Source: Octopus sinensis
Lineage: Eukaryota
Assembly (NCBI RefSeq): GCF_006345805.1
Contig: NC_043017.1
Span: forward strand, 6,014,001 to 6,078,000
Direction: 5' to 3'
Length of the DNA: 64,000 nt
Program-made: the position numbers and the translations under genes
Shown here: positions 14,905 to 63,519 of the stretch, in pieces
Layout: each line of letters opens with the position of its first letter
Position numbering within the stretch: position 1 is the stretch's first letter
The notes under the pieces: model-generated
What the model saw: the letters and a program-made list of their open reading frames with translations, nothing else
Told to the model about the DNA's origin: nothing
Databases searched by the model: none

Positions 14905-15497
14905 GCATATTTTGTCCTCTGCAAAAGAAGTGTGTAGTCGGGCATTGCCGTGAGAAAAGACAATATTCATACAATTAGCATGTGCTGGACGTTTCTGCAT
15001 TTAATTTGTGCAGCTGGTCCGAGTGCACACCAGAATTGATGGCCCTGTCCGTGAAGAGAAGCTTTCAAAAGACAACGCCCCTTGCAATCCCACCAAATTG
15101 AAAGCATTACCTCGTTCTGCTGAAGTTTTCCTTTGAAGATTTTTTGTGGTAACTCGCTGCGCTTCCGCCACGATCGTTTGCGTTTCGCATTATTATGGAC
15201 GGTCCCTTTACCGTCCTTCTTACCTTTTCTTCAGAAAAATGTAATTTCTTTTACGTGTCTGTAACGAATTTGGAAATCCTTTGGGTGAAGTTTGCCTCGT
15301 TCAATTGATGCGGGACTCGAACATCTAGCCTGCTGACCAATTAATGCTGATGGTTTTGAACACTCGGTTCAGATATTCAGAGTGTATCTGCAATCATCCT
15401 GCTCGTATAACAGGGGAAGGTTTCGCTGTTAATCTCAGATGGCCGACCAGATCGAGGTGCATCTTGAATCAGAAAATTTCTCGATCGAAATCTCGAG
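14905..15497 (-). pseudogene. Mariner (DD34D) transposase remnant with frameshifts
   Basis: Minus-strand translation pieces RFRSRNFLIQDAPRSGRPSE, ADTLNISEPSVQNH, RVPHQLNEAN (WVPHEL motif), HNNAKRKRSW, VMLSIWWDCKG, KRPAHANCMNIVFSHGNARLHTS. Confidence 0.9.
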
Positions 15498-29995: not shown

Positions 29996-30704
29996 GTATG
30001 TATATATGTGGGGTTATATCTCTGTGTGCGTGCGCGTATGTGTATATATGTGTGTGCATATGTATGTGTGGTGTGTGTATATATAGGTGTGCGTGTGTAT
30101 ATATATGTGTGTACGTGTGTGTGTGTATATATATAGGTGTGCGTGTGTATATATATATATATATGTGTGTGTACGTGTGTGTGTATGTATATATATATAT
30201 ATGTGTGCGTGTGTATATATATCTCTGTGTGTGTATATGTGTGCGTGTGTGATTTGTGCCGTAAACCATTTACCATTTTTGTGGTTCCCCCTTTGATGCT
30301 CAAAGTACGTGCTTATTTTGTTTGATGGTTAATCCAGCGCTGGTTACACATATAAACCATTCGATATATACGAGCCATCCACCAAAACCCCCATCACACT
30401 GCAGAACCCCTGTACCCTCCTCAGCCAACACCATCTGTTACGAGTCCCCCTTGCATTTCTTTAAATTTCCCACTCTGAAGATTCTTACTGTGGATGCAAC
30501 TGATAGTTACTGCAAAGCTCTGAATCTTCCAATTTCGCCGCAATTAACTACAATCTACAATTCTATTGAGTTCTGCTTTTTTTTCTGACAGATAAAGGAA
30601 TTTAGTGCGAGCAATCATCTCTTCTATATGAATATATCTGTGTGCGTATGTATATATGTGTATGGGGGTGGATATAATAGATATATGCGTGTGTATGGGG
30701 GTCG

Positions 30705-30838
30705 GCTGAAGTGTTCATTGCGCAGAATCTTCTCGATTCTCTCACGGGATATTCTAATAGGATTGGCAATTTGATTTATTTTCAATCGCTGTCATCCATC
30801 ACCATGTCGTGAACAAGATCAGTGTTTTTTTCTCGTTG
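30705..30838 (-). pseudogene. Mariner transposase HTH fragment
   Basis: Approximate minus-strand reading NEK..DLVHDMVMDD...KINQIANPIRISRERIEKILRNE, allowing frameshifts. Confidence 0.7.
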
Positions 30839-31234
30839 GTGGTTGTTGCAGAACGTTCAGACCTTGGCTCCGATTCAAGATGCCCCCCCCCACCTCCTCC
30901 CTACGCCCCCTATCTGCAGCTGCCCGCTTTTGCACTGTTCATAAAACTGCAGCAGCATCCCCCCCGTGGCAACAAACATGTTAGCATGAATGTCCTTGGG
31001 GGGTGGGGAGTTGAACCCTTTAATTGCAAGTACTTGATAACATCACGAAGCCAGTTTGGGTCCATTTTAAAAAGAAGTCGCTACTCATTAATTCTGAAGC
31101 CTTCTTTGAACAAGCAGATGTCAATTTACCTGGGGAAAAAACAGGTAATTATTAATAAAAAAGCGTTGAAATGAATGCATGCAAGATTTCACAGCTCTAG
31201 CATCACTCCTTCATAGTCAGCCAATCAACTTTTC

Positions 31235-31540
31235 AGCCTTTTCTATGGCTATGGTGGTGTGATACCAGTCATAGTGTCACGGGTTCGATTCCTAAAACAG
31301 ATGGTACATAGTGTCTTTCAACAAAGAGCTTCATTTCCCATAACTCTTATCTACTCAGGTGAAAATGGCTACCAATGGACGGTGGAGCAGTTCCTACACC
31401 TTCGCTCGATGTTCTTTTGCTGGGTCAAAAGTAGAAGGACAGAGAGGTTTTCTTATGTCAGGTCGTGGCAACACAAGCATCCAAAAGACTTGGTCAAAGA
31501 ATGGTACCAGCGACCGGGTTTTACTCGCTTGCGAGTAGCG
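31235..31540 (+). mobile_element. Old tRNA-derived SINE (family G)
   Basis: B box GGGTTCGATTCC and core-like CTACTCAGGTGAAAATGGCTACC; no second copy seen in the window. Confidence 0.45.
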
Positions 31541-31629
31541 GTTAAAATTTATTTACATACAGGTACATACGTGTGTATATGATTATGTATATATGTGTGT
31601 GTGTGTTTGCATGTATATACGTGTATTTA

Positions 31630-31674
<45 letters not shown>

Positions 31675-31777
31675 CTTATGAGTGTGTATATGCCTGAGTG
31701 TAAATTGTATACATATATACATATATATACATATATATACATACAATTTACCCATCGCAGCCTTACACACAACACAC

Positions 31778-31819
<42 letters not shown>

Positions 31820-32254
31820 ATAATATATATATATACACAGGTGCGATGGGTAAATTATATATACATATGTCTGCGTGGACATGAGCATGTATATGTATTC
31901 GTGCTATATATATAAAGCATTTATATATGTATATGCATATATGTATGTAGTGTATATATACATATATATATATATAATATATATATATATATATAATATA
32001 TATGTGTGTGTTTGTATGTATATATGCGTATGCTGTGTATAAATATTTGTGTATAAGGTTACTACATACGGATACACGTGTGTCGCAACCTCCGCTTATC
32101 TCTGTCCGCAAATATTACCTTCTTCTATCTCGACGTTAAGTCAAGTACCATTCCCCTTAATATCTTATCTCCATTCCACTTGCATCGTTCTCTATCTTTT
32201 CATACAAATACCAATGCATTCATTGCTCCCGCCCTTTCTTTTAATAGACATCTA

Positions 32255-32312
<58 letters not shown>

Positions 32313-32662
32313 TTGTTATTGCCGTCTATTTATCTATTTATCTGTCTTCCTCGCTCAATAGAGTTATATCTGTGTGTAGTGTCATTACCGCATTTTGTAT
32401 ATCCTATTATTGAATAATGTATTGATAGAGACGTTGATAGATAAGTGTAGTTTGTATGAGTGTGTGTTTATGGTGGTGGTGGTGGCGTGGGTCTTCGGAT
32501 GTCTGGTTGAAAAGTGTGTGTGTGCGTGTGTGTGTCTGTATAATATACATGTACATACACATACGTTTGCCAATGCACAAAAAAACTGAATTCCGATGAC
32601 ATAATTTAAATCGACATTTAGATATCGTTTCCAAGAAATACAAAATGCACACACAACACATA

Positions 32663-32707
<45 letters not shown>

Positions 32708-32792
32708 TCTCCATGATAGATTGGTAGCCACTACACTTTTTTCACTTCTTTTTTTTTCTCTCCTTGTTTCTTCCTTGTTTTTTTCTGTGTCC

Positions 32793-32828
32793 CTTTCTGT
32801 AGAAGAGCGTAGGCTCGAAACGTAAAAG
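32793..32828 (+). ncRNA. Minimal type-I hammerhead-like motif (A6U core variant)
   Basis: CTTT-CTGTAGA-A-GAGC(GTAG)GCTC-GAAAC-GTA-AAAG: stem I CTTT/AAAG, stem II GAGC/GCTC, palindromic stem III ACGT. Confidence 0.7.
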
Positions 32829-32996
32829 ACTTTTTCTATTCCTGAGCGTTATACTAATACATCTGTTTGTTTTGTACACCACCTGTCTTCGTCTTTTGTT
32901 TTTTCGTAAACTCTCCCCCTATATATATATCCTTTCGTATACCGTTGGCGATTTTTTTCCTCTGTCTTCCCTTCTCTGGATCTTTCCTTCTCCTAT

Positions 32997-33031
32997 GTTT
33001 CCGACGAAGAGCTCCGCTCGAAACGTTAAAC
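32997..33031 (+). ncRNA. Minimal type-I hammerhead-like motif (U4C core variant)
   Basis: GTTT-CCGACGA-A-GAGC(TCC)GCTC-GAAAC-GTT-AAAC: stem I GTTT/AAAC covaries with the first motif. Confidence 0.7.
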
Positions 33032-33294
33032 CCTCCATCTTTCCTTCTTTCCTGAGCGTCCAATAATACTATATTTGTTCCACGTCCTCGCGTTGTTGTG
33101 GGTTTTTTTGTGCTTTCTTGTTTGGATTAACTTATATATATATTTTATATATATATATATAATATCTAATATATATTTATTTAATGTCTGTTTGTGGTGG
33201 AGTAAGACGGCTTCTTACGCAGATATTTCAAGAATCCAAGAATATCCTGTGCATAAGTTTCTTCTGAGTGGATAAAGGGTTGCACAACACGAAA

Positions 33295-33458
33295 AAACCC
33301 AAAAGACGAAGGCAGGTGGTGTACAAAACAAACAGATGTATTAGTATAACGCTCAGGAATAGAAAAAGTCTTTTACGTTTCGAGCCTACGCTCTTCTACA
33401 GAAAGAAACAAGGAGAGAAAAAAATGTGTGTAGTGGCTAACGATCTATCATGGCGACT
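33295..33458 (-). mobile_element. Inverted copy of the first pLTR remnant (hammerhead motif at 33370-33405)
   Basis: Reverse complement of ~32706-32900 with a short indel. Confidence 0.85.
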
Positions 33459-34232
33459 ACAGTTTCAAATAGACCTGCGCGTATTTCTGAGATGGCATTG
33501 GTTACAGGTTTCTAATAAGACAATCGCTAGTTCACTGCATTCATCGATAAGAAAGCAAGGGATTGCCCTTACAAGTCGGACTGGAAAAATCCCACCGTGT
33601 CATTTTTGTGCCAATGCACTGTATTCTCCGCTCGTCACCGATGTTAATATTGCTCAGACTTTTTAAAACTGAATCAATAGCAACGATTCCGCCATTGCTA
33701 TCTCCGCACTTCTTCCACGACTCACCACACGCTTCTTCCTTCATTTAAAATGTTTTCTGTGAATAATTCCTATAAGACAGGCCCCCGCAGTTGATCAGCT
33801 CTTGTTTCCCCACCTATCTTTCACAGCTTTTAATCCCCCAACGCAGTTCTAAGTGTACAAATTCTTGCTATTTTTAATTGCTTTCATTTTGTTATAGTAC
33901 TGACGATATAAATACTTTTTCCTGCAATCAATTTTACATCGTTTTTCATAGATTTTTTTTTAGTTTTGGTTTTGCATTAAAATTTTCTGTTTTTCTTTTC
34001 CTTTCCTTTAAATGTTCCGATTTAATTAACTTGTTCATGCAAGAATGATCAAAACCTTTTTTGCATGCCGCTGCTTCGTAGTTTCCCCTCCTCTCTTTAG
34101 CATAAGCGTTTCAGATCCAGTAACGGTAGATGAATAAGGGATTCTTAAATCTCAGCATTGTGCACCGATTTATTACCGTTAGCAATTCGCAAAAATTCGC
34201 ACGCATCTCACACTCTCTCCACCGCAAAAGGC

Positions 34233-34373
34233 TTATGACGTCATACGATTAAACTTATAGAATTGTATGTCCTGTGGTCATGTCATTATCATTAAACATG
34301 TAGAATTATTTTTTGACGTCAGAGAGCCATGTCACTAAACATGTAGAGTTACGTGTTCTTATATCATCTTCTC

Positions 34374-34409
<36 letters not shown>

Positions 34410-34796
34410 AATAAATATGTAGAATTGAACCTTCACATGTCATAACCTTCACACCTCTAAAGATGTAGGATTAAAAATTCTAATGACACAATCTCCATCT
34501 CAACAAATATGAAGGGTTACAGTTTATGACGTCACAATCTTCGCACTACAAAACATGGAGAATTAAGCGTTATGATGTCAATGATCACTCCACTAAACAT
34601 GTAGAATTAAACATTATGACGTCACAGTCTGCAGACCACTAATCATATAGAAGTAAACGTTATGATGTCGCAATCTTCACATTCTTAAAAATAGAATTAA
34701 ACATTATGACGTCACAATCTTCACGCTACTAGACGTGCAGAATTAAACTTTATGACGTCATAATCTTCACACCACTAAACATGGAGGATTAAACGT
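34233..34796. repeat. Degenerate ~45-bp minisatellite carrying CRE palindromes
   Basis: Unit TATGACGTCACAATCTTCACACCACTAAACATGTAGAATTAAAC; TGACGTCA at 34236, 34314, 34527, 34617, 34707, 34753; variants at 34573, 34663. Confidence 0.88.
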
Positions 34797-34944
34797 AGAA
34801 TTATATGTTCTAACTTAAGCCAGAACAGGACGATCTGCAACTGGATGTGAACACTTACCTTAGGGACCAAATGCCCAATAACTTACCCGTACATCCGTTC
34901 CCCTCTGCGTGTCCCCTTTAATTATACAAGCATTCGAAGGAGCA

Positions 34945-35148
34945 ACCTCGTGGTCGCTCGACTTATTAGAAATCGTAGCTAATTCTTTCACAAATAATTA
35001 ACACACCTACAGTGTTTAAAATTGAAGTATAAAACACAATGGGTAATGCAGCCTTGTCTGGAGAGCAAAAATGGACGGCACGGATGGAACGTCTTTTGAC
35101 TATAAGTCCACATGACCAGAGCTGTGGTTAAACAACAAGAGCAACAGT
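34945..35148 (+). mobile_element. SINE family F
   Basis: GTGGTCGCTCGACTTATTAGAAAT...TAAACAACAAGAGCAACA. Confidence 0.6.
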
Positions 35149-35859
35149 CACTTGCGTCTTCATTTCTCCAAGATATTTATTGCATTGCTTCGAGATTCCT
35201 TTAAACGGGAACAGTTGCTTGTATAAACGTAACTGTTGGTTCGAATGTCACGCATTACTACAATTAGTTTCCTCTATAAATAGCCCCACGGTCAAACTCA
35301 ATGTCACAACTATCCTGCTTATAGCCTCTATATAAATGCTGACACCTTCCTATGTCCCGAAGTACTACAAACACCAAACTTCTTACTTTAGTTCTTTTGC
35401 TTTCCAAATTCATATACTACCAGAAACAATTTTACTTTTAATTTGCTCCGAGTGGATAATATTGCTCAGATCAGACTAACTACATCAAAGTATTAACTAA
35501 CTAATGCTAGTAATATTATTTAACTTGCGCAGACTAATTGTGTTAAGTAGCATTGGGTAATATTATTAACTGATACTGAATATTAATGTTAATTAGCATG
35601 TACAGGCAATACAGTTAATTAACTTGTATGGGTTAATATTATTAACTAGTATTGGAGAAAAGTATTAACTGGTATTTGGTATAAACATAAATTAATTGGT
35701 ATTGGGTAAAAGTTTTAATTAACTTGTACTGAATAAGAAGTCATTAATTGGTATTGCATGAAAATATTAATTATTATGCTCGGTAAAAACTAATTAAATT
35801 GTAGGCGGTAAAAATACTGATTAACCAATACGTGATGAACTCATTGTTACTTCTGTCTT

Positions 35860-36078
35860 TAGTTGTTTCATTCATGAGAATGCGACCATGCTGGGGCACC
35901 CCTTTGAAGAATTTTTAGTCGAACGAATCGACTACAGTACTTAAATGTTTATTTTTTTAGGCTTGGCACTTATTCTATCGGTTTCATTTTGCCAAAATAC
36001 TAAGTTACGAGGACGTAAATACGTCAGCACCGGTTGCCAAATGGTGGTGTTGGTGGCGAAACAAACACAGAAACAAAG

Positions 36079-36112
<34 letters not shown>

Positions 36113-36608
36113 CACACATATATATATATATAGATAATATATATATATATATATATATACGAAAGGCGGCAAGCTGGCAGAATGGTTAGCACTCCGGGCG
36201 AAATACGTAGCCGTATTTCGTCTGCCGTTACGTTCTGAGTTCAAATTCCGCCAAGGTCATCTTTGCCTTTGATTCTTTCGGGGTCGATAAATTAAGTACC
36301 AGTTACGCACTGGGGTCAATATAATCGACTTAATCCGTTTGTTTGTCCTTGTTTGTCCCCTCTGTGTTTAGCCCCTTGTGGGTAGTAAAGAAATATATAT
36401 ACATATATATATGGATAGATAGATACACACAGACACACGACGGGCTTCTTTCAAGTTCCATCTGCCAAATCCACTCGCATGGCTTTAGTAAGCCCGTGGC
36501 TTCAGTAGAAATCACTTGCTACTACGCGCCCAAGGTGCCACGCCGTGGGATTGAAACACTATGTCGACGGGAAGCGTACTTTCTTACCACACAGCCACGC
36601 CTGCGCCT
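35860..36608 (-). mobile_element. SINE family A split by a family-B insertion in its internal (AT)n
   Basis: Tail half 35860-36070, head half 36435-36608. Confidence 0.8.
36164..36393 (+). mobile_element. SINE family B nested in SINE A
   Basis: AAGGCGGCAAGCTGGCAGAATGG head to GGGTAGTAAAGAAATA tail. Confidence 0.92.
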
Positions 36609-36849
36609 TACTGGATAAAAACTGATTAACGTGTACTGGGTAAAAATATTAATTAACCAGCACTTGGTGAAAACGTTAATTAATTGGTACTAGATGAAAA
36701 AACAAATATTAATCAACTGGTAATGCGTTAAAATATTACATTGCTTGGATTGGGCAATAACGGAAAAATAGTAAAAATCGATCGAGTTTGTGGATTGGTT
36801 TCTGGATCAGTGGTGATCGATCTTTTCGTAAGGTGGGGGCCGAAAATAG

Positions 36850-36851
36850 AT

Positions 36852-36882
<31 letters not shown>

Positions 36883-37560
36883 GGTGGTAGTGGTCATGAA
36901 GAGAGGTCTATGTACAATAACCTTACAAACATGAGCAACTCGTTGTTTTCTTAATATATCCAATGTGTCTGTCCTTGATTTATAAAGATACGGTGTGGCT
37001 GAGGGAGATTTGGCTGCTATTTCTTAACAAGTCCAATGACGGTATTATTAAAACAAGGGCGACGGTGAAGATGGTGGTGGTGATGGTGGTGACAACGGGG
37101 ATGACAATGGTGATGGCGATGATGGTAGACGTGGTGGCGGTGGTGGATGTGGTGATAGTGATGATGGCTGTGTTGGCGGTGGTGATGATGATGGCGGTGG
37201 CGGTGTTGATGCATATGATGTTAATAGCGGTGGTGATGAGTGTGGCGGTAGTGATGGCGGCGGTGGTGGTGATGATGGTGATGATGGTAGCTGTGTTGTT
37301 GTGGTGGTGGCGGTAGTGATGGCGGCGGTGGTGGTGATGATGGTGATGATGATGATGATAATGCTGGTGGTGTTGATAATGATGGTAATATTGATGATGG
37401 CGGCGGTGGTTGCAAAGACTGTGGCGGCGGCGTCGATCATGATGGTATTGGAGATGATAGGTGGTGGTGGCGGTGATGATATCAGAGATGACGATGATGA
37501 CGATGATGATGATGATGATTACGAGATTGCTGCTGTTGCTGTTGCTGTCTCAGAGGAGTT
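36850..37560. repeat. (GGT/GAT/GGC)n trinucleotide block
   Basis: Direct reading. Confidence 0.85.
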
Positions 37561-37606
37561 TATAACCAGTTGTGTTTTGTGGTGGCGCTAATGTTGTTTG
37601 GTGTTC

Positions 37607-37639
<33 letters not shown>

Positions 37640-38482
37640 AAAACAAACAACAAAACAAAACAAGGAAAAAACAAAAACAAAGAAAAAACCATCATTGATC
37701 TCTCTTATCTCATTTTTCCTGTTACATCTTGTTGCTGCTGCTGTTGTTGTTCTTGTTGTTCTTGTTGTTCTTGTTGTTATTGCTGTTTGTTTTACAACAT
37801 TATATATTTCCAATACTCATTTTTACACCTCTAACCGCCACTCTTCTCATATCCCTTCCCCTCCAGTCCATTCCCCTCCCTCCCTCCCTCCCTCCCTCCC
37901 TCCCCCACATCTCACTTCCTTCCTTGTTCTGTGTCTCATCTTACCTCATGCTTTCTTTCTTTGTTTGTTTTTGCTTTCTTTCTTTCTTTCTTTCGATTGC
38001 TCCTGGTGTGTGCGTATGTGTATGCGTGTATGTGTGTGTGTGTGTGTGTGTGAGTGTATGTTTATGTGTGCCTGTAAGAATGTTAAAGAGAAGTGTGTGT
38101 GTGTGTGTGTGTGGTGTGTGTGTGTGTGTGCATATCTCTAGGTGGATGCATTAATGCTTCTTAATTTATGTACATTTGAACGTATGAATATGCATGTAAG
38201 TACATACATGCTTATCTCTCTATATACAATCGCATACACACACATATATACATACACACACACACACACATACTAAGCTATATATATACATATATAATTT
38301 GGCATGTGTGTCTGCGCCTGTATTTCTAATAATCTGCCAAATTATGTGTTTATATATAGGAATTTGTTTTTTATGCTTATTTATTACGAGTATACATATT
38401 ATTACATATGCAAATATGACTGCGTATGTGTTAGTGAGTGTGTGTATATACATGTGTGTGTGGGTGTGTGTATATATATATA

Positions 38483-38597
<115 letters not shown>

Positions 38598-39387
38598 ATA
38601 TATATATGTGTGTGTGTGTATATATATATTCATTCATTCATTCATTCATTAATGAATGGGATTTATGCTAATAATGGGAATTATTAACATAAATTCCAAT
38701 CAAAGAATTCATTATCCAGCACAGTTATTGAGCACTTCTTCTGTTTTGTTTCTAACGTATGTGGATGTGCGGCGCATTAAATTTATTGTAACCATTACAA
38801 TAACACCAAACAAGACCACCCTATTTGAATGTATGTGCGTGTGTGTGTGTGTGTGTATGTGTGTGTGTGTGAATGCAAGTAAGTTTATATAAATGTAATT
38901 ATGCTTATATATTCATTTACAGGTATTCTTCCTGTGGCATTTCTGTGAAAAAATATTTTCTTTAAACATTTATAATAAAACCAATATCAACCTTTAATAC
39001 TACCAATGTGTGTGCACGTGTGCCCCACGCTATATCAGTTAAGCTTAATTTCATTGTTATAATTCACCACATAGAACTTGTTCTTGTGCCGACACTTCGA
39101 CATGATATACGTTTGTTTTATTACTTTGTACATCGATATACAGCATAAAGACGTGTTGTTACAGAAGCACACACACATGTCCCTATTTTGTTCTGTGAAT
39201 GTTTACTTAGTGTTTCTAATTATTGACCATGCAATATATATGTGTCTTACATCTCCCACTTTAAACCTCATGCTCTTTGCATTTTGATAAGTATAACTCT
39301 TCTATATAGACCGAGATTTGAGTAACTTAATGTGAACTTAGTCATGCATTTCACACCTTGCTTTCTCCCCCTCTCCATATCGGTATG

Positions 39388-39437
<50 letters not shown>

Positions 39438-41146
39438 TGAAGATGTGGTGTTTCTCTTTCCTTCGTACCGAAAGGTGTACTTAGTTAAACAGAGGAATCT
39501 CGAAATTATCCAATCTCATTACAGAGTAATTTCACTCAGTGTTTCCTTCGTCCTCTTGGGATAGAACTTTCCTTCTGTAGACAATTACTTTACTTATATA
39601 TTTGCTATTAAGTGGACACATTTCTCTTGTCTTGTAATTACATTAGGAATTCTTGGCTATTTGTTGTTCTTGCAGCTTTCTCGCAGTTTGTTTTAAATTA
39701 TAATATTAGTTACATGTGCAACAGTAACTGATTTTCACAGTATTCATATTGAACAATTCCCTGTATGTATGTGTGTGTGTGTGTATATATGTACGTAAAA
39801 TCTGTCTGATTAACACGAAGAAATTCCTAATTATATTTTATATTACATTGTTACTGAACGGCAAATAGAAGTAAATTAAATAAATAATTTATTTTGGAAG
39901 TCTGCTAGGTTGTTACTGCTTTAACGTGAGTAAGAAACTAAAATCTTTCTTAAGCCCACTCTTTTCTAATGCGTTGTTATAATAATTAGTAGTTTTGTTA
40001 TAAGTAACTCTGTCAGGGAAAAATGTTAAATATTATTCCTCTTATATTACTGAGTGATTGTATTGCGAATATTTAACTTACAGTAATAATTGAAATACAT
40101 GTAATACAAGTATTACATGTTCGATCAGTTTCTTATATGCTTAGAATTTTCTTATTCTTAAATTTAGGCTTTTATCTAAAAGATTAACTCTGTAATTTCA
40201 AAACTTTTCCCTTTCAGTGCCGAGTTTGAATCCACCGTTGTTAGCTTTTTTTTTTTTTTTGTATGACTTACAGAATAATACATAAACAAATTCATGCTTG
40301 CAGCTACTATATCTCCCAAAGCACTCTAATTAGATTTTTAATCTGCTGCACTAACCAAATGTACCAAAAGGAAGTTAATGAAACTGAACACACTATGTAT
40401 CACAACTAAATCCAAAGCAAAATCACAAAATATATAAAAATACATGAACAGGAATCAAAATCTTTCTGATCAATATGAAACTGCAGTCCTGCAAATCAGA
40501 AACAACTGGTGCAATAGTTTCTATAGAGACATAAAAGTTGTAAACTTCAGGACTCTAACTGTTAAATCGTACATTCAAGTACGACGCTCCAGCATTTTCT
40601 CGTTCGTTGACAATTTACAATAAGGAGGCATTTTAATGTGTTATAATATAGAGCATGAAGCAAAATAACAGATTCAAAAGCGCATCAGATGTTATGCTTC
40701 CATCTTACAGAGAAGTCTTTGAAAAAAAACATACCTCAAACTCTTAAAACATTTCCAAAAGAAAAATGTCCCAAACATGATTTGCTATGGAAACATTATT
40801 GATAACAAAATACGAACCAAAATCCAACACAAACACGAAATACTTAGAATGAATTATGAACGTAACTTGGCGTTTTGTTGGTTACAATATCATTCCAAAG
40901 ATTTTAATGCCTACTACAAAAATACGGAATTAAAACCTCTGGTATCATGTCTTCTTTCAGATGAGATCGAGAAAGTCTCGAAATGATAATGGACATAGGA
41001 GAACTGTTTCTCCAAACTAAAGCATAAAGGACATGTAAAGAAATATAGAAAAGATTAATAAAACAGCTTTAGCTCGATTTAAGTCTTGTCTTCAATATAA
41101 CATGTTTTAAACTACACTATACCTTGTGTGTGTGTGTGTGTTCAGA

Positions 41147-45242: not shown

Positions 45243-46420
45243 TCTCGCTATGTGATGATATCAATATAGTAGTAAAGGCAACCCCCACAAGAGAGTAATG
45301 TTGATATAGTAATAGAAAACTAATACTATGGAGAGCATCTAGCAAAATAGCTAACTCCATCCACCAGAGTATTAAGGTCACAATAGAACTACCCCACTAA
45401 ACACCCCAACCATAGACTACCAGTACTAGACACTGAACTCTGGCTAGAAATTGTGAAATAAAACCCAAATCCTTCATTCATACTATGCAAAACCTATGGC
45501 CTCAAAATACCTGATCCACCGGAACTCAGCCATTGCGGGCAATGCCAAATTCAACTATTTGATGGCAGACCTCGTCAGAATAATGAGAAATGTGTCACGC
45601 ATGTGCGAGCCTACAGAATTAAAGAGACACATACAGTATTTCATTCACCGCATGCAGTTCTCAGGTTACAGCCATATAAGAAAGGATCAGAGTATACAAA
45701 GGAGCCATGAAGAAATTTGATAATATATTATGTAATGATAGGAATGGGATTTGCCCACTCTATAGGAACAAGTCATGGAACACTATAGAAAGGACAAAAA
45801 AAAAGAAAATAGGGAAGGCCAACTCTTGGTATGATAGCCTAAATACCAGAGTGTCATTGTTCGTTGACACCACCACCCCTGGAGGTGAACTGGCGTACCG
45901 CTTTAGAAGGACCCTAGATAAACTTAACTAAGAATTAGGTTGTTGAAAAGCCAGGCAACCCTATCAGATCTATTAATTGGTAGAACCTATCCTTTTTAGT
46001 AGAACTCTCTGTATGGATAACTATTGCACTGTATGTAGATTTAGCCCACAAACAAACTGTAAAGCCAGGAAATGTGGTCTATAGTATAAGATGTATAGAG
46101 AGACGATGCAGTAACAAGACAGTAACATACGTAGGGGAAACAGCAAGAAGCATTGGAGAGCGGGTGAATGAGAACATTGGAGACAACTCAAGGAAGGTAA
46201 AAGCTCATCGATTCTGTACCAACACGCCGACCAAGAACACGGGGGATCAATCAATAACATAGAGATTAAGATATTGTCCACACATAGAACAGATGCAACA
46301 ATTAGACAAATTACAGAAGCTACACATATAATAGAAAATAAACCTAGCCTGAATAGAAAACTAGAATGGAGAATAGCACACACAAAACATATGACGATAG
46401 TGGATCCTGCAAACATAATA
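45243..46420 (+). pseudogene. Penelope-like element (Neptune-like) ORF remnant: RT C-terminal half, thumb, Cys linker, GIY-YIG endonuclease
   Basis: RYV(D)DINIVV at ~45245; LPVLDTELWLE; KPMASKYLIHRNSA...RMQFSGY; NCKARNVVYSIRCIERRC...YVGETARSIGERVNE; IRQITEATHIIENKPSLN; several frameshifts. Confidence 0.9.
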
Positions 46421-47689: not shown

Positions 47690-48236
47690 GAGTGAGAGAG
47701 CAGTTCATGCCATCAAAGTGACACTGGGGTAAAATATACGAAGCCCAATATACCCATCATGACTACCCGTCTGATAAGGCACTTGCATCACAACCATATG
47801 TGCGCGACATGGTGATCTCATATCAAGATAAACAGCACATGACCTTGCAGGTGGGGCCCAGTTAGAAATTTCTTCAGTTGAGTAGCCCATCCCGCTCAAA
47901 AGGTCCCTGAATAAGGGTTGTTAAGGATGTTGAAAGAACCACCCCATGTTTCCAGAGTGAATTATTCAAACTCCAAAGAATTCCTCAAAACATGGCTATG
48001 ATGCTCCCCACTACTTCTGCTCATGATCAGAGATGAGATGCATGTATCGTCAGCCACTAAGGGACATGCTCAACTGGTTAAGGTCAAACAACTGACAAGC
48101 AAATCTGTGGTATTGAGCAGAATATTTGCTGTAGCCCATCTTTTATACCAACACAAAACAATGTACATGATAACACTTCCAATCAGTTAAGATCAGAAGC
48201 CATGAGAGCCTCTGCCTGGTACTGCATCAGGGCATT
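47690..48236 (-). mobile_element. Non-autonomous ~550-bp element sharing the 3' UTR of the adjacent R4/Dong-type LINE, flanked by (TAA)n on both sides
   Basis: AAAGTGACACTGGGGTAAAATATACGAAGCCCAATATACCCATCATGACTACCCGTC matches 47328-47388; no RT/RLE coding sequence. Confidence 0.8.
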
Positions 48237-49209
48237 TATTATTATTATTATATTATTATTATTATTATTATTTTATGTGTAATATTGCTTTCTCTGTTAT
48301 CTGTGGGTTCGAGTCCCACGCGGATAGGAAAGCCTTCTTTTTTCTACCAAGGACTTATATGACCCTTTATTAGACTATTTCCTTAGCCATTGCACGGTGA
48401 TTGCCATAAGCTTTTAATTAAGCTTATATAAAAATATCATTATTATGTACAGGCTTGTAAAACACGGCACCGGATTAAAAAAAAATACCATTCACACCGA
48501 AAGCATGTCGAGATATATTTTAAGAGATATATAACACCCACTTCTTGATATATTAGAAACGGCAACCAAATATCCTTTAGGTCCTGTAAGGGAACATATA
48601 CATAGCTACTCGGTCTTTTAAGAACAGTAGCCGAAATCTTCCTCAAATCCCACCATACTGCTGTTCTTTTTTTAGTAGCATTATAAACACAAGAGGTTGT
48701 CGGCCTAGATATGAAATAAGAGCACGAATTAGCAACGCTTTGTTGAATGCATTTCATTATTTCTTCTCGATCAATACTGACCCATGGCTAAACAACTGTA
48801 TCACAAAATGGTAGCATCGTTGCCAAAATACATTCGATTCCTTGTACGTTCAATTTGGATTCTCTTCATATTCTTAATTTCTTTAAAACAATATCTGAAG
48901 ACATTGGACAAGATCTCTTTGGTGATTTTTGTTTTTATGTTATTTTATTTTTTTGCTGTTTTTTTCTTTTGTTTTCATTATTTTTTTCTTCTTCTTATAT
49001 TGATCCGAATTATCTTTGTGCAGACTAATTGGTCGCAGACTTTTAAATTCTTCAGTATTCCATATCTATCGAAGATCTATTACTAATTGCAAGAAAGAAT
49101 AGCTAGCAGTAATAGTAGTGGGATGTGATGATATATACACACGCACACATATGTATAAACGAGCGCTCGCGCGCACATAGACGCACGTGTACCCATATAT
49201 ATATGGGAC

Positions 49210-50890
49210 GTTAACTATATATATAAATACACACACACATATATGTATATACACACATATATATATAAATGCACACACACATATATGTACATACACTCAT
49301 ACATATATATATAAATACACACACACATATATGTACATACACACATACATATATATATAAATGCACACACACATATATGTACATACACACATATATATAT
49401 AAATGCACACACACATATATGTACATACACACATACATACATATATAAATACACACACACATATATGTACATACACACACACACATATATATATAAATAC
49501 ACACACACACACATATATGTACATACACATACATATATATATATAAATACACACACACTTATATGTACATACACACATACATATATATATAAATGCACAC
49601 ACACATATATGTACATACACACATACATATATAAATGCACACACACATATATATACACACACACACATATATATAAATGCACATACACATATATGTACAT
49701 ACACACATACATATATATATATAAATGCACACACACACATATATGTACATACACACATACATATATAAATGCACACACACATATATATACACACACACAT
49801 ATATAAATGCACACACACATATATGTACATAGACACATACATATATATATAAATACACACACACATATATGTACATACACACATACATATATAAATGCAT
49901 ACACACATATATGTACATGCACACATACATATATATATAAATGCACACACACATATATGTACATACACACATACATATATATATAAATGCACACACACAT
50001 ATATGTACATACACACATAGATATATATATATAAATGCACACACATATATGTACATACACACATACATATATATATAAATGCTCACACACATATATGTAC
50101 ATACACACATACATATATATATAAATACACACACACATATATGTACATACACACACACACATATATATATAAATGCACACACACATATATGTACATACAC
50201 ACATACATATATTAATATAAATGCACACACACATATATGTACATACACACATACATATATATATATAAATACACACACACATATATGTACATACACACAT
50301 ACATATATATATAAATACACACACACATATATGTACATACACACATACATATATATATATAAATGCACACACACATATATGTACATACACACATACATAT
50401 ATATAAATACACACACACATATATGTACATACACACATACATATATATAAATGCACACACACACATATATGTACATACACACATACATTATATATATAAA
50501 TGCACACACATATATGTACATACACACATACATATAGATATAAATACACACACCATATATGTACATAACACATATACATATAATTATATATATAATGCAC
50601 ACACACATATATGTACATACACAACATACATATATATATAAATACACACACACATATATGTACATACACACATACATATATATATATAAATGCACACACA
50701 CATATATGTACATACACACATACATATATATATAAATACACACACACACATATATGTACGTACACACATACATATATATAAATACACACACACACATGTA
50801 CATACACACATACATATATATATATAAATACACACACACATATATGTACATACGCACATACATATATATATAAATGCACACACACATATG
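49210..50890. repeat. 1.7-kb higher-order minisatellite, ~40-44 bp unit (AT)nAAATGC(AC)nATATATGTACATACACACATAC
   Basis: Roughly 40 units by eye; source of the 556/454-aa pseudo-ORFs. Confidence 0.93.
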
Positions 50891-51277
50891 TAGGCCGTTA
50901 TCTACAAGCGCACACACACACATGCGAGGCTAGGGTTACTAAAGTAGTGATGGTAATAGTATATAGTGGTGTATGAGTATAAAGGGTGTTGTGCTAGTTG
51001 TATGCAGTGGTGGTGGTGGTAGTGTGAGGAGATAGTACCAGAATGGTAGGAAGTGGTGGAAGTGATGAAGTATGTGTTGTAGTACTGATGCTGTTGATGG
51101 TAGGATAACCTGTTGGTATCGTGGAATGGAGGGGGAGGGGTGATGATGGTATACGAAATGGTGGTGGTGGTGGTGGTGGGGAGGATGGTGGGGGGGACAT
51201 TGGAGGAAGCATCGTTTCGCGAGTAATGGTAATAACTCGGCGATATAAATCGGTAGTCTTAAATAGGTAAAAGACTG

Positions 51278-51291
51278 GTTGCCATGGTTAC
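51278..51291. promoter_or_regulatory. RFX X-box
   Basis: GTTGCCATGGTTAC (reverse GTAACCATGGCAAC) fits GTNRCC-AT-RGYAAC. Confidence 0.55.
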
Positions 51292-51548
51292 TGGACTAGA
51301 GTGAGACAATGCGAGCTTAGAGACTAGTTAATGGGAGATACTGTGTGTGTGTGTGTGTGTGTGTGAGAAGGAGAGATACGGGGGGAGAGAGGAGAGAGAG
51401 ACAGATGGAGACAGACAGACAGACAGACAAGGAAAACGATTGGTTAAATGGGAGGAAGAATACGAAGTCGGATCAGAGTCAATGAAAGAAAGTCTGAGAG
51501 AGAAGGAAGGAGGGAATGATATATATATGTGTGTGTGTGTGTGTGTGT

Positions 51549-51706
51549 AGGTGTGGCTGTGTGGTTCGTAGCTTGCTTACGAACCACATGGTTCCGGGTT
51601 CAGTCCCACTGCGTGCCACCTTGGGCAAGTGTCCTCTATTATAGCCTCGGGCCGACCAAAGCCTTGTGACTGGATTTGGTTGACGCAAACTGAAAGAAGC
51701 CCGTCG

Positions 51707-51739
<33 letters not shown>

Positions 51740-51908
51740 TTCTCCCCGCAACATCGCTTGACAACAGATGCTGGTGTGTTTACGTCCCCGTAACTTAGCG
51801 GTTCGGCAAAAGAGACCGATAGAATAAGTAGTAGGCTTACAAAGAATAAGTCCTGGGGTCGATTTGCTCGATCGACTGAAGGCGGTGCTCCAAATAAACA
51901 AGTAAAAG
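51549..51908 (+). mobile_element. SINE family A
   Basis: Near-consensus copy. Confidence 0.92.
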
Positions 51909-51911
51909 AGC

Positions 51912-51965
<54 letters not shown>

Positions 51966-51975
51966 GGGGGAGAGA

Positions 51976-52345
51976 GAGACGTAATGGCTCAGTAGTTAGG
52001 GCAGCGGACTCGAGGTTTCGATTCCCAGACCGGGCGTTGAGAGTGTTCATTGAGCGGAAACACCTAAAGCTCCACGAGGCCCCGGCAGGCGGAGGGGAGG
52101 GGGCGAACCCTGCTGTACTCTTCACCACAACTTTCTCTCACTCTTTCTTCCTGTTTCTGTTGTACCTGTATTTCAAAGGGGCCAGTCTTGTCACACTCTG
52201 TGTCTCGATGAATCTCCTCGAGAACTACATTAAGGGTACACGTGTCTGTGGAGTGCTCAGCCACTTGCACGTTAATTTCACGAGCAGCTTGTTCTGTTGA
52301 TCGGATCAAGTGGAACCCTCGTCGTCGTAACCGACGGAGTATCAC
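51976..52345 (+). mobile_element. SINE family D with tail Z
   Basis: First ~200 bp homologous to 21858-22162; different tail (AAGGGTACACGTGTCTGTGGAGTGCTCAGCCAC...CCGACGGAGT). Confidence 0.85.
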
Positions 52346-52369
52346 GTAGATATGTATATATTATTACCT

Positions 52370-52660
52370 TCGACAGCGGCCATGCTGGGGAACCGCCTCG
52401 AAGAATTTTTCTCCCGGTCTCCTTGGGGAACTGCTAAGTTAGTGGACGTAAGCACACCAACACCGATTGTCAAGCAGTAGTGGGGCAAACACACAACACA
52501 AAGATATACACACACACATATGCATATACGACAGGCTTTTTCAGTTTCCGTCTACGAAATTCACTCACAAGGCTTTGATAGGCCCAAGGTGCCTTTCAGT
52601 GGGACTGAACCTGGAACCATGTGGTTGGGAATCAAACCTCTTACAACATAGCCTGTGCCT
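52370..52660 (-). mobile_element. SINE family A, internally deleted
   Basis: GCGGCCATGCTGGGG tail; TTCAGTTTCCGTCTAC; GGGACTGAACC. Confidence 0.75.
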
Positions 52661-52671
52661 ATATATATATA

Positions 52672-52998
52672 TGAAACTCGACTCCGTCGGTGCACCTAAG
52701 AGGTTCCCCTCAGGAGTACAAGTCTGGGCAGAAAGTTGCCCTCACCGGCGAACACACAATCTGTAGAAGACCAGCAGTCGCCCATGCATACCAGCCTCCC
52801 CTCTCCACGCCACTGATGTTATCCAAGGGAAAGGCAAAGGGGCCGATACAGCTTGGCACCTGTGACGTCGCAACTCATTTCTACAGCTCAGTGAACTGGA
52901 GCAACGTGAAATAAAGTGTCTTGCTCAAGAACTCAATACGCAGTGGTTAGAGCATCGAGCTTACGATCGTAAGCTCGATGCTCTAACCACTGAGTCAT
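52672..52998 (-). mobile_element. SINE family C whose B-box region is replaced by an inverted copy of its 5' end
   Basis: Perfect 52-bp palindrome at 52941-52992. Confidence 0.88.
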
Positions 52999-53313
52999 GC
53001 TCTTTCATAACATAACACAACACACAACAAACACACACACACACACACAGATATATAATATATATATATATGTAATAAAATAGAACATATGCATATATAT
53101 AAACATATATGTACGTAACTACCTCTACATGTACATATACACGCATATATGGTGTACAGGACACCAAAAAGACATCGAACACATAGAGAGACGAAACACA
53201 CATAGACACAAACAAGGAACAAGACAAGCCAAAAAAAAGAGAGAGATACAGGACAATAGACACAACGAAAAAACCCTTCTTCAGTCGCTAAGATTTCATC
53301 TATATATATATAT

Positions 53314-53358
<45 letters not shown>

Positions 53359-54037
53359 GCACAGACAGTAAAAGTACAAAAAGTAATTAAAGAGATATAA
53401 ACGAAAATTTGCCCTGCATCAGCCTTTTTACAAAAGATTTGTAGTTTCAACATCTTGAAATAGAACTGCTACTTTAGTAGAGTCAACGACCTACAGAATA
53501 CTGTTTTTCAGACAACTGATACAGTGAAGACAAGACAAGATAAAAAAAAAATGACGAAACATATTGGTGGACTTTTAGTGACTGAGAGAGAAAAGAAAAG
53601 CAAGGACAAAGAAAAGGGACGGTTAAGGAAGAAATAAAAAGAACAAAGGTCTATAAACGATGAAATTAAAGAATATGTCTCTTCGATTTTGGGTTTTTTT
53701 GTGTTTTTTTTGTATGGCTAAAAGGATATAACACCAAACAACATGATACAATAGCGCAACAAGTACGATGCGGAAATGCAAAATGAAATAAAATTTAAAA
53801 AATCGCGGCTGGATGTTAGAACGATGTCCTCAAGTAAATAATGGCGAGTAAAAAAAAAAAGATAGAAGCGTTCGCTTGATGAGTTGAGAAGTAAAGAGAG
53901 AGACTCGTAGCTGCAGCGGAAACAGGAAGTAGCAAGCTGGAATCGAAAGGAAGCAGAATGGTTAGACAGATAGAAAACAACAAAGCGGAGATGAAGAAGG
54001 AAGGTGGGGGGAAAAGAGTGAGCAGGGCAGCATCGCT

Positions 54038-54051
54038 GTTACCATGGCAAT
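54038..54051. promoter_or_regulatory. RFX X-box in a promoter-like island (ETS CAGGAAGT 53923; YY1-like AATATGGCGG 54067)
   Basis: GTTACCATGGCAAT, one mismatch to the consensus. Confidence 0.5.
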
Positions 54052-54178
54052 GACTGCGTAGTAACAAATATGGCGGAAAAACCCTTCAACTCTGCATTCT
54101 TAGAAAAATACTATTTACATTATTATTTCCAGTTTCAGCAAAGACAACTCTCTCTCCTTCTCTTTCCCTCTCTCTCTC

Positions 54179-54264
<86 letters not shown>

Positions 54265-54559
54265 CTTTTCATACATATATGTGCGTATGAGTATATAAAA
54301 ATATGTATATATATGTGTATGTATATATATGTGTGTATGTGTATTTATATATATATATGTGTGTATGTATATATATATATATATATATATGTGTATGTAT
54401 ATTTTTGTATATATATATGTGTGTGTATATATATATATGTGTGTGTGTGTGTGTTGTGTGTATGAATACATATATGTATGCACATATATACATGTATGTC
54501 TGTCTGTATGTATGTGTGTGGTGTATATATCTATATACACACACACACACACACGCACG

Positions 54560-54600
<41 letters not shown>

Positions 54601-54605
54601 CACAC

Positions 54606-54659
<54 letters not shown>

Positions 54660-54724
54660 ATAAAAAACAAGTCAAAAATAGAAAATGCTAAATATATATA
54701 TATATATCGATTGATTTATGATTA

Positions 54725-54890
54725 TTGCTGTCCGATGATTAAAACTGACTCGTTCAACCCCAAAACACTCCAATCGTGACATCTCCTTATTATATACATA
54801 ATATCTAGGAATTCATCATCTAATATATAACTGGTTTATTAGAAACAGCAGAGCGTGATTCAAAAGATCTTTGACTGCTATTTCTAACAC
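54725..54890 (-). mobile_element. SINE family F, decayed
   Basis: CTCCAATCGTGACATC...TTTGACTGCTATTTCTAAC. Confidence 0.45.
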
Positions 54891-55922: not shown

Positions 55923-55956
<34 letters not shown>

Positions 55957-56023
55957 ATAATCCCATAATGCATGCAGGTAGTATGAAACCATGGTCATAG
56001 GAACCTAATTAAATAAACTGCAC

Positions 56024-56037
56024 ATCACCATGGCAAC
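56024..56037. promoter_or_regulatory. RFX X-box
   Basis: ATCACCATGGCAAC, one mismatch. Confidence 0.4.
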
Positions 56038-56154
56038 CACTCCTAACTTCCACCGTTTTTCCATATCCACCACAACCTTCACACCCCTGCAGCGAAATAA
56101 ACTCCGCTTCATTTGACATTACAGAGATTGAGGAAAATATTGTTACATTCCTTT

Positions 56155-57000: not shown

Positions 57001-57074
57001 AACATCACTGTTAGGGGCATGTACAAACCCCCAATCTATCACTTAACCCTCGACTTTCTACAGTGAATTTACTT

Positions 57075-57088
57075 GTTGTCATAGCAAC
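57075..57088. promoter_or_regulatory. RFX X-box
   Basis: GTTGTCATAGCAAC, a near-palindromic X-box. Confidence 0.55.
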
Positions 57089-57249
57089 GCTGGATCCGTG
57101 GAAAGTCTGTTAAACCAGATGATGGATGGATGGGGTGGCAACAGGGTGGGATGCGGGTGGGAAGTGGTTTGAAAGGGTTTCTTGCTATTGTTGTTGGTGT
57201 TATTGTATTGAGAGCTGATTACCGTTATTGTTTGCTTATATTTTAGTTG

Positions 57250-63485: not shown

Positions 63486-63519
63486 TTATGTTTTTATTAT
63501 TATTATTATTATTATTATG

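What the first reader, a model, noticed from the sequence alone, without database searches (positions are those of the whole stretch)
34233..34796. Minisatellite that builds a homotypic array of CRE (TGACGTCA) sites
About 12 degenerate units of ~45 bp. Six keep a perfect TGACGTCA (mostly ATGACGTCA) and two show CpG-type decay, with regular 44-46 bp spacing between 34527 and 34753. By eye the CRE is better preserved than the rest of the unit and keeps its CpG. I saw no other perfect CRE in the window. This could be a repeat-born, copy-number-tunable cAMP/CREB-ATF enhancer (inference).
Basis: partly seen in the sequence, partly recalled or inferred. Interest (0 to 1): 0.75.

Follow-up and report, generated by a model that had tools for sequence, protein, structure and literature searches.

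The report
Minisatellite carrying six CRE motifs
A real 46-bp tandem repeat has copied a cAMP-response-element motif six times, but nothing in the sequence shows that the motif is protected or used, so it is most likely an ordinary neutral minisatellite that happens to offer bZIP binding sites.

Summary
The array is real. Window 34233-34795 holds 12 head-to-tail units of about 46 bp plus a partial 13th. The six perfect TGACGTCA sites are the only ones in the 64 kb (shuffles give about 1). It is also the only complex-sequence minisatellite in the window.

- The CRE columns (85% identity) are better kept than the 14-bp spacer (64%). They are no better kept than a second 18-bp block, CTAAACATGTAGAATTAA (84%; Fisher p=0.87).
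- In the six older units the CRE window ranks 14th of 39.
- CpG retention is unremarkable. CpG o/e is 0.83 in the window and 0.98 in the array. In the younger units the CRE's CpG column is among the more often changed.

No gene, promoter, mobile-element protein, terminal repeat or second copy of the unit was found nearby. Orthologous loci could not be reached.

An unrelated dispersed repeat in metagenome contigs carries a similar 45-bp CRE array with variable copy number. Such arrays therefore arise repeatedly and can ride on repeated DNA.

Best reading: a locally born, neutral minisatellite (about 0.55). A working CREB/ATF enhancer is possible (about 0.13) but has no support beyond the motif itself.

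The parts
34233..34795 (.). Whole minisatellite: 12 units of about 46 bp (37 to 46 nt; unit 4 is 76 nt because of the TC run). Consensus: TTATGACGTCACAATCTTCACACCACTAAACATGTAGAATTAAACG.
   Evidence: TRF period 46; direct-repeat families D2-D4; hand alignment verified against the window.
34233..34523 (.). Older, decayed half (units 1-6). Mean identity to the consensus is 0.66. There are deletions in the spacer. CRE equivalents are TGACGTCA (34236), TGTGGTCA (34273), TGACGTCA (34314), TTATATCA (34359), ACATGTCA (34435) and TAATGACA (34481).
34524..34795 (.). Younger half (units 7-12; lengths 46/44/46/44/46/46). Mean identity to the consensus is 0.87. TRF also reports a 90-bp period over 34524-34771 (2.8 copies, 77% matches).
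34236..34243 (.). Perfect CRE, unit 1 (TTATGACGTCATA)
34314..34321 (.). Perfect CRE, unit 3 (TTTTGACGTCAGA)
34527..34534 (.). Perfect CRE, unit 7
34573..34580 (.). TGATGTCA, unit 8: CpG to TpG change in the CRE
34617..34624 (.). Perfect CRE, unit 9
34663..34670 (.). TGATGTCG, unit 10: CpG to TpG change plus A to G
34707..34714 (.). Perfect CRE, unit 11
34753..34760 (.). Perfect CRE, unit 12 (14-nt palindrome TTATGACGTCATAA)
34370..34409 (+). (TC)20 microsatellite grown inside unit 4. It replaces most of the spacer.
   Evidence: period 2, 20 copies, 89% matches
34775..34792 (+). Example (unit 12) of the second conserved block, consensus columns 26-43, CTAAACATGTAGAATTAA. It has 0.838 identity over 12 units, as well kept as the CRE. 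Family D3 finds 9 copies at 75% identity or more.
34796..34803 (+). Partial 13th unit (TAGAATTA directly after AAACG). This is the right edge of the array and a short homology that could have seeded the first duplication.
   Evidence: the seeding role is inference

Best explanation
This is a locally born, selectively neutral minisatellite.

A founder segment of about 46 bp happened to contain the palindrome TTATGACGTCA. It was multiplied by replication slippage or unequal exchange. The left-hand units are old and decayed: about 66% identity to the consensus, deletions in the spacer, and a TC microsatellite grown inside unit 4. The right-hand six units come from more recent rounds of duplication (about 87%).

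The six perfect CREs exist because the motif was in the unit that was copied, not because each copy was maintained. As naked DNA the sites are good CREB/ATF/Jun-type bZIP targets and may be bound opportunistically if the chromatin is open. No selected regulatory role is indicated.

Shown: the array, its age gradient, equal conservation of the CRE and a second block, and ordinary CpG behaviour. Inferred: the slippage mechanism and neutrality.
For: - All six TGACGTCA sites of the window lie in the array, one per unit and in register.
- There is an identity gradient, 0.66 for units 1-6 and 0.87 for units 7-12, and an inserted (TC)20 run.
- CRE columns score 0.854 and block 2 scores 0.838 (Fisher p=0.87). 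The spacer scores 0.643, and that is where the indels and the alignment ambiguity lie. The CRE window ranks 14th of 39 in the old units.
- A uniform-rate simulation gives some 8-column window with at least 6 intact copies in 8% of runs.
- CpG o/e is 0.83 in the window and 0.98 in the array. [quoted passage not shown]
- In units 7-12 the two CpG positions of the unit are among the more changed columns. Column 7 is kept in 4 of 6 and column 46 in 3 of 6, against a mean of 5.2 of 6.
- There is no other copy of the unit or of its 2.4-kb flanks in the window, and no terminal inverted repeats.
- No ORF over 60 aa lies between 33750 and 35900. No Pfam host-gene domain was found in 30 ORFs of the window.
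Against: - The CRE 8-mer has more intact copies (6 of 12) than any other 8-column window outside the CRE block (at most 4). Two intact copies survive in the strongly decayed left half, where a uniform model expects about 0.2. For the CRE window taken as chosen in advance, the simulation gives P=0.003.
- Two well-kept blocks separated by a loose spacer is also what a bipartite binding unit would look like.
- Neutrality cannot be shown from a single sequence.
Confidence: 0.55

Rival explanations
1. The array is the internal variable tandem repeat of a mobile or dispersed element, or a remnant of one. The CRE copies would then serve, or once have served, the element's own promoter or enhancer rather than a host gene.
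For: A direct analogue exists. Eight metagenome contigs share a dispersed non-coding repeat of at least 3 kb, with 74-88% identity between copies over the flanks. It carries a 45-bp TTATGACGTCA array with between 2-3 and 12 perfect CREs per copy. A second dispersed family (16 loci) carries 17-bp TTCTCATTATGACGTCA repeats. The window itself is packed with SINE copies and transposase fragments.
Against: No second copy of the unit or of the 33459-35855 segment occurs in the 64 kb. There are no terminal inverted repeats and no flanking long direct repeats. No element protein lies nearby. The window's unit is unrelated to every retrieved family beyond the CRE itself. A 64-kb sample is too small to exclude a family of low copy number.
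Confidence: 0.2
2. The array is a working, repeat-born enhancer or promoter-proximal module. CREB/ATF-family bZIP dimers occupy the full-site CREs and confer cAMP- or activity-dependent transcription on a neighbouring gene. Output would depend on unit number.
For: - There are six consensus full sites with favourable ATGACGTCA(C/T) flanks at regular 44-46 bp spacing.
- The CRE has the most intact copies of any 8-mer in the unit (fixed-window P=0.003).
- The CpGs are probably unmethylated in such a genome, which CREB binding requires (PMC9476566; PMC7532970).
- Tandemly repeated CRE-type sites do act as enhancers in deltaretrovirus LTRs (PMC7601775) and in baculovirus hrs, where enhancer strength correlates with the number of CRE/TRE motifs (PMC13513840).
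- Human minisatellite VNTRs are associated with the expression of nearby genes (PMC8096271 and PMC8024321, titles and abstracts seen).
Against: - The CRE is not kept better than block 2, and its CpG is lost in half of the units.
- The copies share descent, so they are not independent evidence.
- No gene, exon or promoter was recognised anywhere in the window.
- There are no data on conservation, accessibility or binding.
- Rough chance estimate: from the shuffle rate, about 1 in 1500 random 46-bp units would contain this 8-mer. A genome of gigabase size with many minisatellites should therefore hold such arrays by chance.
Confidence: 0.13
3. The unit is a bipartite binding module for another factor or a pair of factors. 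Block 2 (CTAAACATGTAGAATTAA) would be bound together with, or instead of, the bZIP site. Alternatively the array is a structural or architectural element.
For: Block 2 is as well kept as the CRE (0.838; 9 copies at 75% or more). It survives in the old units better than the CRE, with the top-ranked windows in units 1-6.
Against: No known motif was tested or matched for block 2. The low identity of the spacer may be an artefact of indels and alignment. The problems of non-independence and missing orthologues apply here too.
Confidence: 0.05

Closest known systems
Minisatellite VNTRs associated with expression of nearby genes (human genome-wide surveys: PMC8096271, PMC8024321)
   Same: Head-to-tail units of tens of bp, non-coding, and each unit can carry a transcription-factor site. 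Copy number is the natural variable.
   Different: In those loci, copy-number polymorphism and association with expression were measured. Here there is one allele, no known neighbouring gene and no expression data.
21-bp Tax-responsive elements of deltaretrovirus LTRs (BLV, HTLV-1; PMC7601775)
   Same: Repeated short units, each with a CRE-type site bound by CREB/ATF proteins. Repetition builds the enhancer.
   Different: Those are three imperfect CREs inside a viral LTR next to a TATA box, and they depend on a viral activator. Here there are 12 units with six perfect CREs, no LTR, no viral gene and no promoter nearby.
Baculovirus homologous regions (hrs; PMC13513840 and Landais et al. 2006 as cited there)
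   Same: Tandem units of about 72 bp carrying CRE-like and TRE-like bZIP sites. Enhancer strength correlates with the number of such motifs.
   Different: Hrs are built around a 30-bp palindrome bound by a viral protein, also act as replication origins, and recur around a viral genome. Here there is no viral context and the locus is single in the window.
Multimerised CRE reporter cassettes used to read out cAMP signalling (general laboratory knowledge, not a tool result)
   Same: Several full-site CREs in tandem are sufficient for a cAMP response when placed just upstream of a minimal promoter.
   Different: Those cassettes sit within about 100 bp of a TATA box. No promoter is known here, and the CREs are 44-46 bp apart rather than closely packed.
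Dispersed repeat with a 45-bp TTATGACGTCA array, found here in metagenome contigs (L003, L019, L035, L046, L048, L052, L070, L074)
   Same: Nearly the same period (45 against 46 bp), the same 11-mer once per unit, 2-3 to 12 perfect CREs per locus, and non-coding.
   Different: The spacer sequence is unrelated. That array lies at a fixed place in a dispersed element of at least 3 kb. The window's array has no second copy in 64 kb. The source organism of those contigs was not shown by the tool.

Membership tests
Minisatellite (tandem repeat with units of 10-100 bp) | Head-to-tail copies of one unit, in register | tested here: met
   TRF period 46, 7.9 copies, score 287; 12 units in the hand alignment.
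Minisatellite (tandem repeat with units of 10-100 bp) | Complex unit, not microsatellite-derived | tested here: met
   The dinucleotide entropy of the consensus is 3.63, the highest of all arrays in the window with period 15 or more and at least 3.5 copies. The others are built from TA/CA/GT/GGT-type sequence.
VNTR (variable number tandem repeat) | Copy number differs between alleles or individuals | not testable with these tools
   Only one sequence is available. Attempts to reach other assemblies failed.
cAMP-responsive enhancer or promoter element | Full-site CRE TGACGTCA, or the half site TGACG | tested here: met
   Six exact full sites; motif definition from PMC7532970.
cAMP-responsive enhancer or promoter element | Central CpG unmethylated, which CREB binding requires | not testable with these tools
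   Indirect only: CpG o/e is 0.83-0.98, and the octopus genome is mostly unmethylated outside gene bodies (PMC9476566).
cAMP-responsive enhancer or promoter element | Lies at or near a promoter, or can be linked to a target gene | tested here: not met
   No coding ORF, Pfam domain or RNA gene was found near the array, and no host gene was recognised in the 64 kb. Short exons and distant targets cannot be excluded.
cAMP-responsive enhancer or promoter element | Motif under constraint relative to surrounding sequence | tested here: inconclusive
   The CRE scores 0.854 against 0.643 for the spacer but 0.838 for block 2. It has the most intact copies (6). The window-wide simulation gives P=0.08 and the fixed-window P is 0.003. 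The units are not independent.
cAMP-responsive enhancer or promoter element | CREB/ATF occupancy and cAMP-inducible activity | not testable with these tools
   Needs ChIP or CUT&Tag and reporter assays.
Tandem array borne by a mobile element | Unit and flanks recur as dispersed copies | tested here: inconclusive
   No second copy in the window. The genome was not available.
Tandem array borne by a mobile element | Element hallmarks: terminal inverted or long terminal repeats, or an element protein | tested here: not met
   No terminal inverted repeats within 33400-35900. No long direct repeat of the segment. No element ORF adjacent.
Viral repeated enhancer (deltaretrovirus TRE, baculovirus hr) | Lies in a viral LTR or genome with viral genes alongside | tested here: not met
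   No LTR pair and no viral domain among the ORFs scanned. One unrelated hit in the viral contig collection (no similarity beyond the CRE).

The most novel reading that the evidence does not exclude
The array is a young, lineage-specific regulatory module made by repeat expansion. Each 46-bp unit pairs a full-site CRE with a second conserved block. bZIP factors of the CREB/ATF family occupy it in vivo, so unit number sets the gain of an activity-dependent response at a distant gene. CRE-bearing minisatellites of about 45 bp would then be a recurrent way for invertebrate genomes, and their mobile elements, to invent cAMP-responsive enhancers.
Probability: 0.1. Interest if true: 0.55.

Novelty: new member of a known kind. 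Interest (0 to 1): 0.15.

Why it matters
If the array were a working enhancer, it would be a clean natural case of a signal-responsive enhancer created and tuned by tandem duplication. It would sit in an animal group where cAMP/CREB signalling is of neurobiological interest.

As things stand it mainly serves as a caution. A tandem repeat multiplies whatever motif its founder unit held. Many identical sites, regular spacing and apparent preservation therefore carry little evidential weight on their own. CpG retention says little in a genome with sparse methylation.

The side observation that unrelated CRE arrays of about 45 bp sit inside dispersed repeats in other datasets suggests a modest but testable question. 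Are such arrays commoner than matched control motifs?

Tried and rejected
1. Orthologous or allelic copies. Exact look-ups of the two longest flanking ORFs found nothing on record. A homology search with the 132-aa ORF at 33268-33666 found no hit. The protein collections do not hold ORFs from this non-coding DNA, so this route is closed.

2. Pattern scan of metagenome contigs for two CRE 11-mers 33-36 nt apart. It returned 89 stretches of DNA (80 listed), but none is related to the window's unit beyond the CRE and the TC run. The same scan of viral contigs gave one unrelated hit.

3. Higher-order 90-bp repeat. This was suggested by the 46/44 length alternation, the CG/TG alternation and TRF's period-90 row. 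However, in-phase and out-of-phase unit pairs are equally similar, 76.5% against 76.3%, my arithmetic on the matrix. I therefore leave open whether the two CpG to TpG changes are one copied event or two parallel ones.

4. Automatic MAFFT alignment of the units was distorted by the TC run. I replaced it with a hand alignment verified against the window.

5. Six-frame Pfam scan of 30001-39902. I scanned 30 individual ORFs instead.

6. Bacterial promoter and terminator scan. It is irrelevant to this kind of genome and found nothing above the shuffles.

7. Literature. I found no paper describing a CRE-bearing minisatellite. A cephalopod regulatory-landscape paper makes no mention of CREB or tandem repeats.

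8. Source organism. I did not verify it. The CpG o/e figures come from the window itself.

Full report
**What is there**

Window 34233-34795 is a genuine minisatellite.
- TRF reports period 46, 7.9 copies and 70% matches over 34439-34796, and also a 90-bp period over 34524-34771.
- The repeat finder places a 13-mer, TTATGACGTCAYA, six times. It places a 20-mer, TCATTAAACATGTAGAATTA, nine times in register.
- My hand alignment was checked letter by letter against the window. It gives 12 units starting at 34233, 34270, 34311, 34356, 34432, 34478, 34524, 34570, 34614, 34660, 34704 and 34750, plus a partial 13th unit (TAGAATTA, 34796-34803).
- The consensus is TTATGACGTCACAATCTTCACACCACTAAACATGTAGAATTAAACG.
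- A (TC)20 microsatellite at 34370-34409 has grown inside unit 4.

The six exact TGACGTCA sites (34236, 34314, 34527, 34617, 34707, 34753) are the only ones in the 64 kb. Dinucleotide-preserving shuffles give a mean of 1.08, and none of 100 reaches six. The two decayed sites are 34573 TGATGTCA and 34663 TGATGTCG. Among all arrays in the window with period 15 or more and at least 3.5 copies, this is the only one with a complex unit. The others are built from TA/CA/GT/GGT-type sequence.

**Is it more than chance?**

The clustering of six CREs is far beyond chance for independent sites, but they are not independent. They are copies of one founder motif. The relevant chance question is whether a 46-bp unit contains this 8-mer. 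From the shuffle rate that is roughly 1 in 1500 units. This is rare for any one array but expected somewhere in a large, repeat-rich genome.

**Is the CRE better kept than the rest of the unit?**

Only partly.
- Identity to the consensus is 0.854 for the eight CRE columns and 0.746 for all other columns (nominal Fisher p=0.024).
- The unit falls into three parts. The CRE block (columns 1-11) scores 0.848. A loose 14-bp spacer scores 0.643. A second block, CTAAACATGTAGAATTAA (columns 26-43), scores 0.838. CRE against block 2 gives p=0.87.
- The CRE window ranks 4th of 39 over all units, 5th in units 7-12 and 14th in the older units 1-6. In the older units, block 2 holds the top ranks.
- The spacer is also where the indels lie, so its low score is partly alignment noise.

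I ran a simulation that keeps each unit's number of mismatches and scatters them uniformly. It gives at least 6 intact copies at a window fixed in advance in 0.3% of runs, and at some window in 8% of runs. The motif was picked after it was seen, I anchored the alignment on it, and the units share descent. This is therefore weak evidence.

**The CpG argument**

CpG is barely depleted here. Observed over expected is 0.83 for the window and 0.98 for the array. [quoted passage not shown] Over 85% of CpGs are intergenic and comparatively depleted of methylation, and transposons carry little methylation (PMC9476566). I did not verify the source organism, but the window's own CpG figures make the same point.

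Within the array the CRE's CpG is lost in 6 of 12 units. In the young units the two CpG positions of the unit are among the more changed columns. Column 7 is kept in 4 of 6 and column 46 in 3 of 6, against a mean of 5.2 of 6. So the CpG is not specially protected.

Units 8 and 10 share both CpG transitions and a 44-nt length, which suggests a copied 90-bp dimer. However, in-phase and out-of-phase unit pairs are equally similar, 76.5% against 76.3% (my arithmetic on the matrix). Whether the two decays are one event or two remains open.

From general knowledge, TGATGTCA read on the other strand is the Jun/ATF-type variant site. On that basis the change would alter bZIP preference rather than abolish binding. 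CREB itself prefers the central CpG (PMC7532970).

**History of the array**

Units 1-6 average 0.66 identity to the consensus, carry spacer deletions and host the TC run. Units 7-12 average 0.87. The array therefore has an old left part and a more recently amplified right part. The right edge ends in a short homology (AAACG|TAGAATTA) that could have seeded the first slippage (inference).

**Surroundings**

- The array sits in a segment of about 2.4 kb (33459-35855) that has no other copy in the window.
- On the left the segment is bounded by an inverted pair at 32706-32898 and 33300-33458. On the right it is bounded by dispersed-repeat sequence (hits elsewhere in the window from about 35856), CA/TA microsatellites and a copy of a tRNA-derived SINE at 36160-36395. 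That SINE occurs more than ten times in the window.
- There are no terminal inverted repeats.
- No ORF over 60 aa lies between 33750 and 35900.
- There is no Rfam family or tRNA nearby.
- Thirty of the less repetitive ORFs across the window gave only a mariner-type transposase fragment (14970-15230, PF01359, E=2.9e-9) and a sub-threshold GIY-YIG match.

No gene or promoter that the array could serve was recognised. Short exons and distant targets cannot be excluded.

**Related sequences elsewhere**

Other assemblies of the locus could not be reached. A scan of metagenome contigs for two TTATGAYGTCA 11-mers 33-36 nt apart returned 89 stretches of DNA, 80 of them listed. None is related to the window's unit beyond the CRE, but they are instructive.
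- Eight contigs share a dispersed, non-coding repeat of at least 3 kb. Copies are 74-88% identical over the flanks. It holds a 45-bp CRE array at a fixed position, with between 2-3 and 12 perfect CREs per locus.
- Sixteen contigs share another element with 17-bp TTCTCATTATGACGTCA repeats on either side of a G+C-rich stretch.
- Further unrelated arrays have periods of 14, 15, 22, 46 and 47 bp.

CRE-bearing tandem arrays thus arise repeatedly, and some ride on repeated DNA. Whether they are commoner than chance is unknown.

**Explanations**

- Best (0.55): a locally born, neutral minisatellite whose founder unit happened to hold a CRE.
- Rival (0.20): the internal array of a mobile element. Analogues exist elsewhere, but this locus shows no element hallmarks.
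It is supported only by site quality, regular spacing and the modest excess of intact copies. Precedent comes from viral repeated CRE enhancers (PMC7601775; PMC13513840) and from human VNTRs linked to expression (PMC8096271 and PMC8024321).
- Minor (0.05): a bipartite module in which block 2 is the real target.

**Comparison with known kinds**

It is a member of the minisatellite class, and the defining features are met. It resembles multimerised CRE enhancers in site content. It cannot be filed as a cAMP-responsive element. Promoter linkage was tested and not met, constraint is inconclusive, and binding and inducibility are untestable here. It is not a viral repeated enhancer, since no LTR, viral gene or viral context was found.

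**Verdict**

The feature is real and the description accurate. The functional reading is unsupported, though not excluded. Interest is low (0.15), and it is a new member of a known kind. The decisive tests are listed in the next-steps field. They are a syntenic comparison across octopods and haplotypes, a genome-wide copy count with a control-motif census, a reading of existing bisulfite and ATAC data at the locus, and gel-shift and forskolin reporter assays with graded unit number.

Noticed in passing
window 35517-35823: A second, degenerate AT-rich repeat lies about 720 bp 3' of the CRE array. It has eight copies of a stretch of about 33 nt with ATTAAC/ATTAAT cores, at 23 and 50-53 bp spacing and 67-76% identity.
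   Followed up: partly
window 49216-50889: A large array that also has a 46-bp period: 36.6 copies, 87% matches, TRF score 2443. Its unit is built from TA/CA microsatellite-like sequence and it has no CRE.
   Followed up: no
window 3995-4488; also 36160-36395 and more than 10 other places: A tRNA-derived SINE family is very abundant in the window. At 3995-4488 it forms a 184-bp tandem (2.6 copies, 91% matches).
   Followed up: partly
window 2478-2559 (-): tRNA-Ser (anticodon AGA), Rfam 55.8 bits. It is the only Rfam family match in the window.
   Followed up: no
window 14970-15230 (-) and 45984-46259 (+): Mobile-element protein fragments. One is a mariner-type transposase (PF01359, E=2.9e-9). 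The other is a weak GIY-YIG match (E=0.009) that falls below the curated cut-off.
   Followed up: partly
window 32706-32898 and 33300-33458: An inverted pair, 80% identical over about 193 nt, about 400 bp apart with TA-rich sequence between. It lies just 5' of the unique segment that holds the array.
   Followed up: no
L003, L019, L035 (2370-2692), L046 (5403-6220), L048, L052, L070 (8048-8415), L074: Metagenome contigs share a dispersed non-coding repeat of at least 3 kb, with 74-88% identity between copies over the flanks. It has an internal 45-bp array of TTATGACGTCA units, and the number of perfect CREs varies from 2-3 to 12 between loci. The spacer is unrelated to the window's unit. The source organism was not shown.
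   Followed up: partly
L012, L037, L039, L041, L044, L045, L051, L063, L064, L066-L068, L071, L078, L081, L087: A second dispersed family in metagenome contigs has a conserved element of about 250 bp. Two to four 17-bp TTCTCATTATGACGTCA repeats flank a G+C-rich stretch, downstream of a conserved GCCACATGTCGCCAATCGCC box.
   Followed up: partly
window 48001-64000: CpG observed/expected falls from about 0.98 at the start of the window to about 0.67-0.68 in the last 16 kb. This might mark a change of methylation domain, for example a gene body.
   Followed up: no
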